NCBI RefSeq assembly: GCF_006345805.1
Contig: NC_043004.1
Span: forward strand, 83,514,001 to 83,578,000
Direction: 5' to 3'
Source of the DNA: Octopus sinensis
Lineage: Eukaryota
DNA: 64,000 nt
Shown here: positions 8,636-14,649 of the stretch, piece after piece
How the letters are laid out: each line of letters starts with the position of its first letter
How positions within the stretch are numbered: position 1 is the stretch's first letter
Made by a program: the position numbers and the translations under genes
Notes under the pieces: model-generated
The model's database searches: none
Seen by the model: the letters and a program-made list of their open reading frames with translations, nothing else
What the model was told of the DNA's origin: nothing

Positions 8636-9658
8636 TGAATCATGCAATTTTATTCCTTTTCTAAGCAAATATATATACAACCCTGCCAACAGCCATGTTG
8701 AAATCGTCAAGTAAGCACTATCTATATGATACAAGTACCCTCCAATGCAACCATATAAAAAATAACCGGTAGTTGTTAAGAATGAAAGTACAAAATATGT
8801 AATATAATTCTGAAATAATTCATTCGTCAAATCCAGTAGAGTACAGAGTTCTTGAAATTGGTCGAAAATTCTCATAATTTCTTTACCTGTGTTCCCATCA
8901 TGTATGCTTTTGTTTTCAATATTATTTATTATTCTACTGTTTAACACCTTGAACTCAGTTATTAAAGTGTTTATAACGAAGTTGTGAATTGATAATAATG
9001 GGAAAATAGGTATAAATTTTATGGTGCTTATTAGATAATGAAGTATTAAGCTAATATTGCCGAAAACACTGGTTCGTGGGAAAGGATATATGAAGAGTTC
9101 CATAAATGTATTACTATCCTTGGTGCAAATCGGTAAAAGATATTCAGCAATAAAAATGCTTAGAAATATAAGAAAGGTATAAATATATTTGTATAATTTC
9201 CGAACAAAGTTGTTTTGAAGTGAAAAATTCGGGTTATATTTAATACATTGAAAATTGGTTATCTTATTCAGAATTGCAACATTTTTATCAGCATGGAAAG
9301 CAGTTCCAAACCATAGTGATGTTGCAGCAATTTGGCTAAAACCGATATCAATTTTAACGTTGAACACAGTTTCGACCTCCTTAGAATTCGAATGAATGTA
9401 TAAGAAACATCTAGCATTTTCTGCAAGCATACATATTTCAAGAATGCGAAAAGTGATGTATAAACCTTTTCTCTTTAGACTATATGATTTCCAAAGATAT
9501 GCTGAAAGTTTTATATTTATAAACTGGTGAATCCTTATAAAACATTGAATAAAATAGTGTGCGTTGTTGGGACGATGCACTTCTCTCTGGTAATTGACCC
9601 TCGGAGAATATGTAGATGGCTGTATATCGTTGTTGTTTAAAGGATATATTGTGAACAT
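8636..9658 (-). CDS. Gustatory-receptor-like (7tm_7/7TMIC) gene A, large coding exon (N-terminus to TM6)
   Basis: 341 open codons from ATG 9658 (the ORF track's earlier start is a TTG). About six hydrophobic segments with GR-like motifs: post-TM2 VAILNKI, TM4 ...TLITEFKVLN, loop FQELCTLLDLTNELF. Ends ...HDS|GTAAGT (phase-0 donor). Clear paralog of 13627-14649. Confidence 0.8.
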
Positions 9659-12600
9659 TTTCTTCAAGTATATTTCTAATACGACTTAAATAAAATATAT
9701 ACTACTGCACGAATAATTTTGTTAAAAAATATTAAGTTCCGTTTCCAAGCTGGTGTTATAAATTATTTTGTAGATCAAGGTTAACGGTTGTTTTTTAGAT
9801 GATATTTCAACTGTTATACGCGCTTCATATATTCTGTAATCCTGGTTTTCATGTGTTCGGACAGTATCTTCAAAATAACAAAAATGACGTTGTAATGTAG
9901 GGAACACTTGGTATAGTGCAATAAATTCATCACTTTATATGTTCATCTTTCTTAAAACAAACTACATGAAAACAAAGATCATTCATAATAACATCAATGA
10001 CCTGCTATAAAGTAATGTTTTAAAAGTTATGCTATTTAGCTTCAGTACAGAAGAGTAAGAGATTATTGGATCTTACTTAAGTGTAGTAAATAATCAATTG
10101 ATTCGCCTTTCTACGTAAATAGCTTCATTTTAGGTAAGTCAATATTCTTTACGTTTAAGTGTTGTAAATATATAACGATGAAAATAGAAAAATGGTTCGC
10201 TTTATTTTGTAGAAATATCAATAAAACATCAATGAGTCTCATACAGGATTCATATTGAAATTTATGTACAAATGCGATTGGAAGTTGAATACCTCACTAC
10301 AATCACACACACACACGCACACACACACAAACACAAACACACACACACACACACTCTCACACATACATATGTACATATAATTTATGTGTATTTCTTCACA
10401 ATCATCTGACCCACTTATTTTCCTTCATTTAAATATATATATATATATATATATATATATATATATGTATAAGTGTATATACATATATACACACATATAT
10501 ACATATATATGCATGCAAACATATATACATATATATATATATATATATAATATATATATATATATATATATATATAACACACACACGCGCGCATGTATGT
10601 ATGTATATTTGTATCTATAAATGATGACTCCATCTCTCTCGGTACTTCATTACATTCAATATAATTCAGCCTTATTGACAAAAGCTTTAATATTATCTGT
10701 GTAGCTTCCTTACATTAATAACCGTTGTCCAGTAAGGAAATATATCGATGTATATTGTTTACTATTAAAGTTATATCAGTAAAAATTCAGATACTAGCGA
10801 AATGTGTCTTAAACTTCAAAAAGGCTTGCATGTATGTGAGTCAAACGTAAAAATAAATCCGTTTTCGTTAAGGGTAAATTTATGCAATTTTTTCTTTAAA
10901 TATGTACAAAATCTATAATAATTGTTAGTATCAGCAATAATTAAATTTCCAGTCCATCATCGAAAAAGTGCCGTAAAACATGATGCCACTTTCCTTTGAT
11001 GACGGCTGTGTCCAGGTAACACATTTGAAACATCAAATTGTTGATGTTCATTGTTGCTTAATGAAATATCAACTGATGATGACTGCCGTTAAGGGATATA
11101 GAGTTTTCAAAGTGGAGCTTCTTACATCAAATACTAAACATGCCGATTCTTGTAAAAATTCTTTCTTGGGGCTTCTTTAGCATGCTTTGTCTTATGGACA
11201 CCAGTCATTATTTGTTACATCTTATTATGGAGCCGTGTAATTTAATAGTTATAATTTCGTTTCCAAAATTTAACACTGATGAAAATTGGTGCCTGATATT
11301 CATTGCCATCTATCTTCTTACAGCAAAGCATCCATGTTTGGTTTTCAGCTTTGCATTTACGCTTCTTAACATAGATTTTCAATTCTACCAGCTATCTGCT
11401 GTTGTCCTGCAGTGTGACAAACCTTGTAGAAGCATGATTGCTCAACATCTTAGAAATAACAAACAAAGCACCATGAAAACGCGCTGTACTCCCTTTAGAA
11501 ACTAACGAAGTGGCTTATAGACAGAATACTTTTCTCCATAGAATGGTGATTTGCAACAATAATATGCAGGCCAGTCTGAACGAGAAATACATATTACAGT
11601 ACAATAGTTGCTAATTACATCGCTGTTATATTTACTTTGTATTACACACATCGGAATAAACCCTGCAGTTTTTTTTTATCTCTTTCATCGTTTAATTATT
11701 TCACTCTTTCGGGAAATTAAACGACGTTAAGGTTTCGTTTAAATTTATGCAGCTCAAGGCATGCGAGAAACACATGAGCAGAGAGGAAATTCCATGAAGT
11801 TGATATTCTAGAAGAGAGTGACCGGTTTAGTAGTTAGCAAAGAGCCGAATGTCTAAGGGAATGAATGTGACAAAAAGTAAAGAGACGGATGAGTCGTGGG
11901 AATCAAAGAAGGGAGGATATGAAATTAGCTGTCTACAAGAAAGAGAGGTCATTATACTAACGGGAGAGAAAAATACAGAGGGAAGCTATCACTATATAAG
12001 TTTGGAGTCGTGAGTCTGCAGCCTGGAGTATATTTTGGGAGAGATTTGATATAATTCAGACAATCACACATTTTCTGAACGAAAACCATGGTAACTGTAT
12101 TTGCTGCAAAATTCCGGATGTAGGAACAGAAATTACTCTATCGTGACGTTTCACTTGGGATTTGTGCACTAGAGTTTCTGCACCTCTAGCTTGTTGCTAT
12201 AATTTCTGAACCTTCTCATCAGGGCTTGTTTCTGGAGTCCACTCCTAATTATGTTAAAGATAGATCTGCTTTCGGCAGAATATTACCCTCGGTGATAACG
12301 AGATTCCACATTGAGAGCAACTGTGTAGGTCTTAGCTAAGTACTGTTCATGTTCAGGCGAGGAGATGATATTTTATTTAAAAAAAAATCGCTTGATTTTT
12401 ATTGACAAGAGGCAAGAATAGCTTCTCACTCCTAAGATGGATCGATAAATCTCCGTTCCAGGAATCAGCCAAGATTTAGTACTCGGTTGCATGGGAGTGG
12501 TGCACAACAGGGAACTTAGAGAGGAGTGATGAGTCATCTCAAATGCATTGGCGTTAGTATAGATAGATATAGCATCAAATATCGATGTATAAATGGAACT

Positions 12601-13626
12601 GCGTATATATATATATATATATACATATATATATATATACATATATATATATATATGTATACATACATATACATATGTACATATATACATATATATATAT
12701 ATAATATATATATATATATATATATATATATATATATATATATATATATATATTATATATATATATATATATATATACATATATATATATATATATATAT
12801 ATATAAGATACATTTAAAGAAATAATTTTATTCTCAAATGCCTTATAATGCTAATAATATAACGTGAACAGGATAAACTATCCATATTTTGCAGAAAAAC
12901 CTGTTGACAGCCCACCATGATATTCGAACTTGCATCCCAGTGATTAGGCGTATATATGTATGTATCTATGTACATTTGCCTGAATTTTCAGTGATATAGC
13001 CATTCTTAATTGCATAATATTTCTATATAAATTTCCAGATGAATCCCTCACTGCTGTTTTATTGATACTTGAACAAAATGAAAACAAATCCTCTTGTGTT
13101 ATAATCTCACCTAGTGCACAACACTTAAGTATATAGAAAACAGATCATCCACGTCCATAAGAAGCTTACTTACAAAGAACGAATACATTGAGCTTATTTA
13201 CAAAGAACGAATAAATTGAGAATTTACTTAAGTAATATTTTCAGCAATTTTTCCTCGCCTTTTAAGTGACAGAAGCTTTACGATATAACTTTAAATGCAT
13301 TATTTTATTGAAAACACTTGACAATGATACGAATGGCCTTTGCATCTATATATTTTAATGAAAGGAGAACATTATAAATATAATGAAATCATTAAACGGT
13401 ATTACTTACTGCCTGTCTTACAACGTCATTCGTTTTATGACATAGATGCATGTTTTAAATTCATATAAGATATCAAGTGAGCATTAGATTTGAAGTAATA
13501 GCTAAATAAATGACTTATCAACAAAATATTTGAACTCATAACACAGGAAAGGGAAAGTTATAATTCTTAACAAAAGTATACATATTTGCACTACACGGTT
13601 TGTTGTCAGAAATATAGCTGAACAAA

Positions 13627-14649
13627 ATGTTTGCAATATATCCTTTAAACAGCGACAATATACAGACACCTGCACACTCTCAGAAAGTAAATTACCAGAG
13701 AGATGTGCATTGTCAAAACAACACACACTATTTCATTCAGTTTTGTATAAGGATTCACCAGCTTACAAATATGAAAATCTCAGCATCTCTTTGGAAATCA
13801 TATAGTCTAAAGAGAAAATGTTTATACATCACTTGCCGCATTCTAGAAATGTGCATGTTTGCAGAAATCATTAAAATGTTCGCATATAAGCGAGCGAATA
13901 TTAACGAATTTAAAGTTGTATCCCAAGTCAAAAGCAGTATAATTGCTATCCAAATTGCCTTAACATTTCTATGGCTAAGTTGTGTTTTCCATGCCAACAG
14001 TATTGTCGAAATTCTGGATAAGATAACCAATTTTCAATGTATTAAATATAACCTGAATTCTCCGTCTGAAAAACAATTTCTCCAGAAAATCTACAAATGT
14101 CTTCATGTCATACTTGTTTTTGGAAGCATTTTTATTGCTGAATATCTTTTACCGATTTGCACTAAGGATAGTAATACATTTATGGAACTCTTCACATATC
14201 CTTTTCCACGAACCAGTGTTTTTGGCAATATTAGCTTAATACTTCATTATCTAATAAGCACCATAAAATTTATACCTATTTTCACATTATTAGCAATTCA
14301 TAACTTCGTTATAAACACTTTAATAACTGAGTTCAAGGTGTTAAACACTAGAATAATAAATAATATTGAAAACAAAAGCATACGTGATGAAGACACAGGG
14401 AAAGAAATTATGAGAATTTTCGACCAATTTCAAGAACTCTGTACTCTACTGGGTGTGACAAATGACTTATTCCAGTATTATATTGGCTATCTTACATTAA
14501 TTTTCGCAGCTTCATTTTTTTTTCTCATAAAATATCACAGCAATTCTTCGACATATGACGTATATTGTATTTACTGGATAATATTAACTTACATGCTCAC
14601 GAATTTAAGTGTACATACATTTCGGAAAGGAATAAAATTGCATCATTCT
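13627..14649 (+). CDS. Gustatory-receptor-like (7tm_7/7TMIC) gene B, large coding exon (N-terminus to TM6)
   Basis: 341 open codons with the same architecture as gene A (FLWLSCVFHANSIVEILDKI; TLITEFKVLN; FQELCTLLGVTNDLF). Ends ...HHS|GTAAGT at the homologous codon. Confidence 0.8.

What the first reader, a model, noticed from the sequence alone, without database searches (positions are those of the whole stretch)
8834..14451. Sharp-edged 327-nt near-identical block shared by the two receptors (gene-conversion signature)
8834-9160 (gene A) and 14125-14451 (gene B) encode 109 aa with only 7 differences (SIFIAEYLLP...QELCTLL), and synonymous sites are also largely identical. The TM2 and TM5-TM6 regions on either side are strongly divergent. 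Purifying selection alone would not conserve synonymous sites. The inverted orientation of the genes favours intrachromosomal ectopic conversion. The block covers the end of TM3, the extracellular loop, TM4 and the following intracellular loop, so the paralogs are mosaics that differ elsewhere in the putative ligand pocket.
Basis: partly seen in the sequence, partly recalled or inferred. Interest (0 to 1): 0.7.

Follow-up and report, generated by a model that had tools for sequence, protein, structure and literature searches.

The report
Gene conversion between two octopus-type taste-receptor genes
Two neighbouring, oppositely oriented gustatory-receptor-like genes share a 327-base stretch that one copy pasted into the other fairly recently; this is real, but it is an ordinary way for chemoreceptor gene families to evolve.

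Summary
A 9160-8834 and B 14125-14451 differ at 13 of 327 nt and 7 of 109 aa. An unbiased max-chi-square scan recovers these same ends (0/300 permutations). dS is 0.10 inside the block and 0.53 outside it.

An outgroup (four Logan contigs) matches gene A through its non-coding flanks but matches gene B only in the coding region. With it, the block groups A+B (61 sites against 3 and 6). The adjacent TM5-TM6 stretch groups A+outgroup (55 against 6 and 15). The A-outgroup distance stays flat at about 0.2. In the block, A and the outgroup are only 56% identical in protein, so constraint cannot explain the 94% A-B identity.

The best reading is non-crossover ectopic gene conversion, probably from A into B. 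The pair is a multi-patch mosaic: there is an older tract in the N-terminal third, and a 42-nt patch private to A forms the block's sharp 5' edge.

The genes are gustatory-receptor-like 7TM ion channels (insect OR/GR fold; the relative is an Octopus bimaculoides "Gustatory receptor", Pfam 7tm_7). The ORFs are only exon 1 (helices S0-S6), ending at a conserved GTAAGT donor. The TM7 exon was not found.

This is a known phenomenon in a little-studied lineage, of low to moderate interest.

The parts
8636..9658 (-). Gene A, large first coding exon (341 codons, helices S0-S6 of a GR-like 7TM channel). ATG at 9658-9656; GTAAGT splice donor at 8635-8630.
   Evidence: ORF. The donor is conserved in A, B and the outgroup. 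All family ORFs end at the same position with a V-S or V-C read-through.
13627..14649 (+). Gene B, large first coding exon (341 codons). GTAAGT splice donor at 14650-14655.
   Evidence: The AF2 model has pLDDT 71 and pTM 0.66. Foldseek top hits are insect ORs/GRs with TM 0.50-0.62.
8834..9160 (-). Conversion tract, copy in gene A (probable donor). Codons 166-274: end of S3, EL2, S4, IL2, start of S5.
   Evidence: 13/327 nt differences from the B copy and dS 0.10. The max-chi2 scan picks these ends. Site classes AB|O 61, AO|B 3, BO|A 6. dS(A,O) here is 0.39, against 0.43 elsewhere.
14125..14451 (+). Conversion tract, copy in gene B (probable acceptor).
   Evidence: Same calls as the A copy. dS(B,O) falls to 0.35 here, from 0.71-0.78 in the unconverted segments.
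9432..9651 (-). Second, weaker or older A-B homogenised tract in the N-terminal third. The B counterpart is 13634-13853.
   Evidence: 34 of 65 variable sites are AB-concordant after the block is masked (chi2 37, 0/300 permutations). d(A,B) 0.150 is below d(A,O) 0.203 and d(B,O) 0.275.
9162..9203 (-). 42-nt patch abutting the 5' edge of the block in which gene A is the outlier and B resembles the outgroup. The B counterpart is 14082-14123.
   Evidence: BO|A at 11 of 16 variable sites; 2/300 permutations reach this.
8660..8798 (-). Unconverted, anciently diverged TM5-TM6 stretch. The B counterpart is 14487-14625. B is the outlier and lacks the family L-x-Y-G motif.
   Evidence: AO|B at 55 of 83 variable sites, 0/300. 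dS(A,B) 1.05. It is not a compensated frameshift. Motif comparison.
10165..10273 (-). Conserved upstream non-coding element of gene A (TATAAA-containing; candidate core promoter or 5' UTR), about 550-610 nt from the ATG.
   Evidence: blastn match 10204-10273 vs 13079-13019, 74%. Three-way alignment with the outgroup.
13019..13130 (+). The same conserved upstream element for gene B, at the same distance from its ATG.

Best explanation
A and B are old, head-to-head paralogues of the gustatory-receptor-like (GRL/7TMIC) family of ligand-gated channels. Long after the duplication, a break in one copy was repaired using the other copy as template, 5 kb away on the same chromosome. This was interlocus (ectopic), non-crossover gene conversion. 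It overwrote about 327 bp (end of S3 to start of S5).

The tract is of the gene-A lineage type, so A was most probably the donor and B the acceptor.

At least one earlier exchange homogenised part of the N-terminal third. Since the last event each copy has picked up a few private changes. In A these include two clusters: the 42-nt patch at the 5' edge and GGGAA-for-GAAGA at codons 254-255.

The two receptors are therefore mosaics. They have the same S3-end/EL2/S4/IL2 module and very different S2 and S5-S6 helices.

Shown: the divergence contrast, including silent sites; the tree incongruence; the lack of constraint in the block; collinearity of A's flanks with the outgroup; and the fold and family. 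Inferred: the repair mechanism, the direction, the number and order of events, and any effect on ligand specificity.
For: 1. Block statistics. 13/327 nt differences; dS 0.10 against 0.53 outside; the block ends are recovered blind.

2. The outgroup. O consists of Logan contigs L001-L004. It aligns to gene A over about 1,800 nt, including both non-coding flanks, but to gene B only across the CDS. The A-B split therefore predates the A-O split.

3. Incongruence. The block gives AB|O 61 / AO|B 3 / BO|A 6. Codons 275-329 give 6 / 55 / 15 (chi2 95.5, p 2e-21). Silent-site difference fractions in the block are A-B 0.05, A-O 0.20, B-O 0.21. In codons 275-341 they are 0.36, 0.17 and 0.33.

4. No special constraint and no mutational cold spot. 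A-O protein identity in the block is 56%, B-O 59%, against A-B 94%. dS(A,O) in the block is 0.39, against 0.43 elsewhere.

5. Direction. In the block d(A,O) is 0.217 and d(B,O) 0.208. That equals the usual A-O distance (0.15-0.29), not the B-O distance of unconverted segments (0.38-0.42). dS(B,O) drops from 0.71-0.78 to 0.35.

6. No net crossover. Both flanks of A remain collinear with O.

7. Not an inserted repeat. The block occurs only in these two places in the window, and it is present in O as ordinary gene sequence.

8. Precedent. Gene conversion between GR paralogues has been reported in insects (PMC6007367; also discussed in PMC4122928).
Against: - There is only one outgroup sequence. 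Its species is unknown and it looks like a pseudogene: ATG->ATA, a +1/-1 indel pair, and a premature stop in two of the three contigs that reach that position. It may itself have undergone conversion.
- With three sequences the site classes are branch lengths, so the incongruence argument needs a rough molecular clock. The flat A-O distance supports one.
- No orthologue of B was found, so the direction rests on assuming the block region once diverged like its neighbours.
- No reads are available to exclude an assembly artefact.
- No GC-biased-conversion footprint is visible. This is uninformative for a single tract.
- The TM7 exons were not found, so it is not shown that both genes are currently functional.
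Confidence: 0.85

Rival explanations
1. The duplication is young, and the regions outside the block diverged fast under positive or relaxed selection. On this view the block is simply the part that did not speed up.
For: dN/dS outside the block is high (0.56-0.98). Gene B's TM5-TM6 stretch has lost a family motif. Silent divergence is also low in codons 0-69 and 120-165.
Against: Silent sites are also strongly diverged in codons 70-119 and 275-340 (dS 0.64 and 1.05 against 0.10). Apart from a 19-nt stretch upstream of the ATG and one upstream element of about 110 nt (70 nt by blastn), the A and B non-coding flanks cannot be aligned, whereas the A and O flanks can. The O branch is 0.187 per site in the block but 0.036 in codons 275-329. 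A single tree with a fast B branch does not predict that.
Confidence: 0.04
2. The block is kept alike by selection acting on the nucleotides themselves. This could be strong purifying selection on the protein plus a constraint on silent sites, such as an embedded regulatory or RNA element, or a local mutational cold spot.
For: dN/dS in the block between A and B is the lowest of the large segments (0.28).
Against: The outgroup differs from A and B at 21-22% of block sites and about 42% of block residues, with dS 0.35-0.39 there, as elsewhere in the gene. No Rfam family matches anywhere in the window.
Confidence: 0.02
3. Assembly artefact: reads from two paralogues were partly merged, producing a falsely similar consensus in one or both copies.
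For: Nothing positive. It cannot be excluded without reads, and the region is rich in microsatellites.
Against: 13 differences remain (12 of them in the first 276 nt), a mix of silent and replacement changes, and both reading frames are intact. A collapse would give 100% identity. Both copies sit in unique flanking sequence.
Confidence: 0.04
4. Reciprocal exchange: crossovers between the inverted copies inverted the 5-kb segment between them, possibly more than once. That would swap the 5' halves of the genes, and the block would be the heteroduplex left at the crossover point.
For: Inverted repeats 5 kb apart are a substrate for inversion. The mosaic changes character on the two sides of the block.
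Against: Both the 5' and 3' flanks of gene A are collinear with the single outgroup contig, so there has been no net inversion since the A-O split. An even number of inversions cannot be excluded.
Confidence: 0.05

Closest known systems
Interlocus (ectopic) gene conversion between clustered chemoreceptor paralogues, e.g. VindGR23a/b in Vanessa indica detected with GENECONV (PMC6007367), and Drosophila chemosensory families (PMC4122928)
   Same: A short tract of a few hundred bp is homogenised, silent sites included, between nearby paralogues of a fast-evolving GR family. The rest of the genes stays divergent. The tract distorts trees and dN/dS estimates.
   Different: Here the genes come from a cephalopod-like genome, not an insect. 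They are head-to-head rather than tandem. There is evidence for at least two tracts of different age, and a direction can be proposed from an outgroup.
Gustatory receptor / GR-like (GRL) 7TM ion channels (Pfam 7tm_7 PF08395; structures DmGr43a 8jm9, BmGr9 8vc2, AgamOR28 8v3c)
   Same: Predicted fold (TM 0.50-0.62). A significant HMMER link to an Octopus bimaculoides protein that passes the 7tm_7 threshold. A conserved phase-0 intron before the TM7-coding part. A long cytoplasmic extension of S4/S5.
   Different: A and B themselves score nothing against Pfam. Their TM7 exon and TYhhhhhQF-type motif were not found in the window. No ligand or expression data exist.
Alternatively spliced GR loci with several large 5' exons joined to shared TM7 exons (Drosophila Gr28b, Gr39a; from my own knowledge)
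   Same: A large exon encoding TM1-TM6 ends at a splice donor, with TM7 encoded elsewhere.
   Different: A and B are on opposite strands pointing away from each other, so they cannot share 3' exons.

Membership tests
Ectopic gene-conversion tract | A contiguous segment with significantly lower divergence between the paralogues than the rest of the alignment | tested here: met
   Max-chi2 88 on all sites and 85.6 on variable sites only, 0/300 permutations in each.
Ectopic gene-conversion tract | The drop in divergence also affects synonymous sites | tested here: met
   dS 0.10 against 0.53. Silent differences 5/100 against 24/116, Fisher p 6e-4.
Ectopic gene-conversion tract | Tree incongruence with an outgroup between the tract and its flanks | tested here: met
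   AB|O 61/3/6 in the block against 6/55/15 in codons 275-329. There is only one outgroup, so the argument depends on a rough clock.
Ectopic gene-conversion tract | Non-reciprocal: the donor is unchanged and the acceptor overwritten | tested here: inconclusive
   The A-O distance in the block equals the A-O distance elsewhere, and the B-O distance drops. This fits A->B. No B-orthologue is available to confirm it.
Ectopic gene-conversion tract | No associated crossover (flanks not exchanged) | tested here: met
   Both flanks of A are collinear with the single outgroup contig. An even number of inversions is not excluded.
Ectopic gene-conversion tract | Both copies exist in the real genome (not an assembly artefact) | not testable with these tools
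   No reads are available. The 13 residual differences argue against a collapse.
GR/GRL 7TM ion channel (Pfam 7tm_7) | Significant sequence similarity to a recognised member | tested here: met
   The A/B profile hits P0008 at E 1.9e-5 and P0007 at 1.5e-5 in 1.84 billion proteins. P0008 is UniRef A0A0L8FL56, 'Gustatory receptor', Octopus bimaculoides, and scores 35 bits on PF08395 against a cutoff of 26.6.
GR/GRL 7TM ion channel (Pfam 7tm_7) | Direct match of the proteins themselves to the family model | tested here: not met
   No Pfam hit for A or B, even at E<=1. The family-alignment profile also finds no GR/OR chain in the PDB sequences. The link is only transitive and structural.
GR/GRL 7TM ion channel (Pfam 7tm_7) | OR/GR fold | tested here: met
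   The AF2 model has pLDDT 71. The best Foldseek matches are AgamOR28, ApisOR5, DmGr43a, BmGr9 and AaegOR10, with TM 0.50-0.62 and probability 0.96-1.0. GPCRs score TM 0.10-0.15.
GR/GRL 7TM ion channel (Pfam 7tm_7) | Seven TM helices, and a TM7 motif (TYhhhhhQF-like) | tested here: inconclusive
   Exon 1 encodes S0-S6 only. No TM7 exon was found by tblastn, motif scans or A-against-B tblastx. The relative P0008 carries LFTYVIVVLQ.
GR/GRL 7TM ion channel (Pfam 7tm_7) | [quoted passage not shown] | tested here: met
   A phase-0 GTAAGT donor follows KLH[DH]S in A, B and O. All family ORFs stop at the same position, and P0008 is spliced exactly there.
GR/GRL 7TM ion channel (Pfam 7tm_7) | Intracellular N-terminus, and intracellular loops longer than extracellular ones | not tested
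   No topology predictor was run. In the model the S4-S5 connection is a long helical hairpin, as in ORs/GRs.
Rhodopsin-type GPCR | GPCR fold or a 7tm_1-type profile match | tested here: not met
   No Pfam 7tm_1 hit. GPCR structures match with TM 0.10-0.15 only.

The most novel reading that the evidence does not exclude
The pair is not the result of one isolated conversion. It would be a snapshot of recurrent patchwork exchange across a cephalopod GRL family, in which short tracts shuffle pocket-lining helices among paralogues. The patches private to A (9162-9203 and codons 254-255) and B's aberrant S5-S6 would then be imports from other family members elsewhere in the genome. This would act as a combinatorial source of receptor diversity, in a lineage whose GR-like receptors I found little discussed in the papers searched.
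Probability: 0.15. Interest if true: 0.5.

Novelty: new member of a known kind. Interest (0 to 1): 0.3.

Why it matters
The practical point is for anyone building trees, dating duplications or testing for selection in this receptor family. The block, and probably the N-terminal tract, must be masked. Otherwise A and B will look like a young pair, and dN/dS will be distorted.

Biologically, it shows that mollusc or cephalopod GR-like genes undergo the same concerted, mosaic evolution as insect GRs. The two channels share one S3-end/EL2/S4/IL2 module but have very different S2 and S5-S6 helices. From my own knowledge of OR/GR structures, S2-S4 and S6 line the ligand pocket, so the pair is a natural chimera that could be used to map specificity.

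It also flags two apparently unannotated GRL genes, and a family that standard profile searches miss.

Tried and rejected
- Pfam on A and B: nothing.
- Word-seeded homology searches with B and with A: no hits, even though relatives exist. Only the exhaustive HMMER profile search found them. The same search with P0008 found only P0007.
- AF2 on the two-sequence alignment: unusable, pLDDT 38. The 12-sequence alignment worked.
- Sequence-profile search of the PDB: no GR/OR hit.
- Exact look-up of the A, B and P0008 products in public assemblies: not on record. The window's organism is therefore not identified directly.
- Literature search for the SRR accessions of the outgroup: one search found nothing, the other an unrelated plant paper.
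- Search for the TM7 exon(s). I tried tblastn with the P0008 C-terminus, two motif and hydrophobicity scans, and tblastx/blastn of A-downstream against B-downstream out to 64 kb. Only microsatellites and SINE-like repeats turned up.
- Compensated frameshift as the cause of B's divergent TM5-TM6 stretch: rejected.
- The block as an inserted repeat or transposable element: rejected, since there are only two copies in the window and it is present in the outgroup gene.
- GC-biased-conversion footprint: none.
- Rfam scan of the window: nothing.
- Shared 3' exons (alternative 5' exon model): rejected on orientation.
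Full report
**What is there.**
Bases 8.6-14.7 kb of the window hold two long ORFs in head-to-head orientation. Gene A runs from the ATG at 9658 leftwards on the minus strand. Gene B runs from the ATG at 13627 rightwards on the plus strand. The start codons are 3,968 bp apart. The repeat finder reports them as an 886-nt inverted repeat at 83%. There is no third copy in the 64 kb. The surrounding DNA is AT-rich (about 31% GC) and full of microsatellites, which marks it as eukaryotic. 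The two products align without gaps over 345 codons, at 78% nt and 65% aa identity.

**Checking the observation.**
- Identity in 60-nt windows is 0.90-0.98 in the block. It is 0.35-0.55 immediately 3' of it, and 0.52-0.67 in codons 70-119.
- A scan for the segment that maximises the chi-square contrast in mismatch density, with no prior coordinates, returns exactly 9160-8834 / 14125-14451. Its chi2 is 88, and none of 300 permutations exceeds 20.5.
- Nei-Gojobori dS is 0.097 inside and 0.525 outside. dN is 0.027 inside and 0.348 outside.
- At codons encoding the same residue in both copies, 5 of 100 differ silently inside the block and 24 of 116 outside (p = 6e-4).

One refinement is needed: silent differences are also few in codons 0-69 (9%) and 120-165 (8%), but reach about 40% in codons 70-119 and 275-344. 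The pair is a multi-patch mosaic, not one island in a uniformly diverged gene.

**An outgroup.**
The exhaustive HMMER search with the A/B profile found eight relatives. The two closest, P0001 and P0002, lie on the same 1.9-kb Logan contig. That contig was recovered from four sequencing runs (L001-L004), which are 99.5-100% identical to each other.

The contig (O) aligns with gene A over about 1,800 nt at 74%, well into A's non-coding DNA on both sides (window about 10329 to 8529). It aligns with gene B only over the coding region, 13609-14692. O is therefore an A-lineage copy, most simply the A-orthologue in a related species, and the A-B duplication is older than the A-O split. O looks decayed: it has ATA in place of the start codon, a 3-nt deletion, a +1/-1 indel pair, and a premature stop in two of the three contigs that reach that position. 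That does not affect its use as an outgroup.

**Three-sequence test.**
I classified variable sites by which two sequences agree.

| Segment | AB\|O | AO\|B | BO\|A |
|---|---|---|---|
| Block | 61 | 3 | 6 |
| Codons 275-329 | 6 | 55 | 15 |

- The contrast between the two segments gives chi2 95.5, p 2e-21.
- The A-O distance is flat across the locus (0.15-0.29, including 0.20 in the 5' flank and 0.217 in the block). The A-B distance swings from 0.04 to 0.48.
- On silent sites only, the block gives A-B 0.05, A-O 0.20 and B-O 0.21. Codons 275-341 give 0.36, 0.17 and 0.33.
- In dS terms, A-B is 0.10 in the block against 0.64 and 1.05 in the unconverted segments. A-O is 0.39 in the block against 0.43 elsewhere.
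- The block is not specially conserved. A and O are only 56% identical in protein there, and B and O 59%, against 94% for A and B. That rules out purifying selection and a mutational cold spot.
- A max-chi-square restricted to the variable sites of the three-way alignment, which controls for site-to-site constraint, again picks 9159-8837 (61 of 74 sites AB-concordant; 0/300).

**Finer anatomy.**
- With the block masked, a second AB-concordant tract appears at A 9651-9432 / B 13634-13853 (34 of 65; 0/300). Its A-B distance is 0.15, so it is older or only partly converted.
- The 42 nt directly 5' of the block (A 9203-9162) form a patch in which A is the outlier and B agrees with O (11 of 16 sites; 2/300). 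The 'sharp' 5' edge is thus largely a private change in A, not necessarily the end of the original tract.
- Inside the block, the only cluster of differences (codons 252-257) is again mainly A-specific: GGGAA against GAAGA in both B and O.
- Polarised by O, the 13 differences split into 6 changes in A, 3 in B and 4 unresolved.

**Direction and mechanism.**
In the block both copies sit at the ordinary A-O distance (0.217 and 0.208; dS 0.39 and 0.35). They do not sit at the B-O distance seen in unconverted segments (0.38-0.42; dS 0.71-0.78). The shared sequence is therefore of the A lineage, and A->B is the more likely direction. This is an inference: it assumes the block region once diverged like its neighbours.

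Both flanks of A are collinear with the single O contig. There has been no net inversion of the interval, so the event was a non-crossover conversion or an even number of crossovers. On the dS scale the conversion happened about a quarter of the way back to the A-O split. The duplication is at least 2.5 times older than that split. I saw no GC-biased footprint.

**What the genes are.**
- Neither product hits Pfam.
- The A/B profile reaches P0008 (E 1.9e-5 in 1.84 billion proteins). P0008 is UniRef A0A0L8FL56, 'Gustatory receptor' of Octopus bimaculoides. It passes Pfam's curated threshold for PF08395, 7tm_7 (35 bits against 26.6).
- With a 12-sequence family alignment, AlphaFold gives a usable model (pLDDT 71, pTM 0.66).
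- The only good Foldseek matches in the PDB are insect odorant and gustatory receptor channels: AgamOR28, ApisOR5, DmGr43a, BmGr9 and AaegOR10, with TM 0.50-0.62 and probability 0.96-1.0. GPCRs score TM 0.10-0.15.

The 'receptors' are therefore GR-like 7TM ion channels.

Helices in the model map as follows:

| Helix | Residues |
|---|---|
| S0 | 32-47 |
| S1 | 61-90 |
| S2 | 96-121 |
| S3 | 147-179 |
| S4 | 198-248 |
| S5 | 255-305 |
| S6 | 312-340 |

The block covers the end of S3, extracellular loop 2, S4, the intracellular turn and the start of S5. The divergent stretches are S1-end/S2 and S5/S6.

**Gene structure.**
Both ORFs carry GTAAGT directly after ...KLH[DH]S (A 8635-8630; B 14650-14655), and O has it too. 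Every family ORF from Logan ends at this position with a V-S or V-C read-through. P0008 is spliced exactly here into a C-terminal part bearing LFTYVIVVLQ, the GR TM7 motif. The 341-codon ORFs are therefore exon 1. The conserved phase-0 intron is the kind of 3' intron used as a GRL criterion (PMC7746228).

I could not find the TM7 exon(s) for either gene in the window. Gene A has only 8.6 kb of window downstream. Gene B's downstream side is occupied by transposon remains.

Two 341-codon frames staying open in 31% GC DNA, despite dS above 1 in parts, argues that both were under selection for most of their history. This is my inference. Current function is not shown.

**Rivals.**
- A young duplication with accelerated flanks fails on silent sites, on the unalignable A-B flanks, and on the 5-fold change in the O branch between segments.
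- Nucleotide-level constraint fails because O is 21% different in the block.
- Assembly collapse would give identity, not 13 differences, a mix of silent and replacement changes spread through most of the block. Only reads can settle this.
- Inversion-mediated reciprocal exchange is not supported by flank collinearity.

**Comparison with what is known, and verdict.**
Interlocus gene conversion among clustered chemoreceptor paralogues, GRs included, is established in insects (PMC6007367, PMC4122928). GRLs are known across protostomes, including molluscs (PMC7746228). This is a clean, well-supported instance in a cephalopod-type genome, with a likely direction and evidence of repeated events. 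It is a new member of a known kind and of modest interest. Its main practical value is as a caution for phylogenetic and selection analyses, and as a natural chimera for structure-function work.

Noticed in passing
window 10165-10273 (-) and 13019-13130 (+); L001 ~100-190: A non-coding element of about 110 nt is conserved upstream of both genes, at the same distance (about -550 to -610) from each ATG. It contains ATATAAATTTC, TGATGTTTTATTGATA and ACAACACTTAA. The last two motifs are also in the outgroup contig. The rest of the 3.9-kb intergenic DNA cannot be aligned between A and B. It may be a core promoter or a 5' UTR exon.
   Followed up: partly
L001-L004 (Logan SRR11869384/85/90/94): The A-like outgroup gene looks like a pseudogene. 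It has ATA in place of the ATG, a 3-nt deletion, and a +1/-1 indel pair that creates a stop. There is also a premature stop in L001/L002 that is absent from L003, so it is polymorphic among runs. The species behind these runs could not be identified.
   Followed up: partly
window 14487-14625 (+): Gene B's S5-S6 stretch lacks the L-x-Y-G motif that is kept by gene A, the outgroup and most of the more distant family members (A2 alignment). It is not a frameshift. It may reflect neofunctionalisation, decay, or import from another paralogue.
   Followed up: partly
window ~17990-24331 (-): A GC-rich (about 50%) stretch carries fragmented ORFs with Helitron_like_N, PIF1 helicase and Pif1 2B domains. 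It is a degenerate Helitron downstream of gene B.
   Followed up: partly
window 30141-30860 (-); 33963-36395 (-); 7516-8164: Other transposon remains are present: a mariner/Mos1-type transposase fragment (HTH_48 + Transposase_1), and a LINE-type reverse transcriptase (RVT_1, zf-RVT). Overlapping ORFs just downstream of gene A (7516-8164) looked LINE-like to me by eye; they were not tested against Pfam.
   Followed up: partly
window 5793-6019 vs 25514-25742; 595-677 vs 26522-26607: Interspersed repeats (SINE-like, about 81% identical over 230 nt) lie on both sides of the gene pair. They are the only similarity between the two genes' downstream regions.
   Followed up: no
P0003, P0004, P0005, P0007 (Logan contigs L005-L007 and others): The same sequencing project holds at least four more divergent members of this GRL family. 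Each is a single ORF of about 345 aa ending at the same intron position. The family is invisible to Pfam, except for one weak sub-threshold 7tm_6 hit for P0004.
   Followed up: partly
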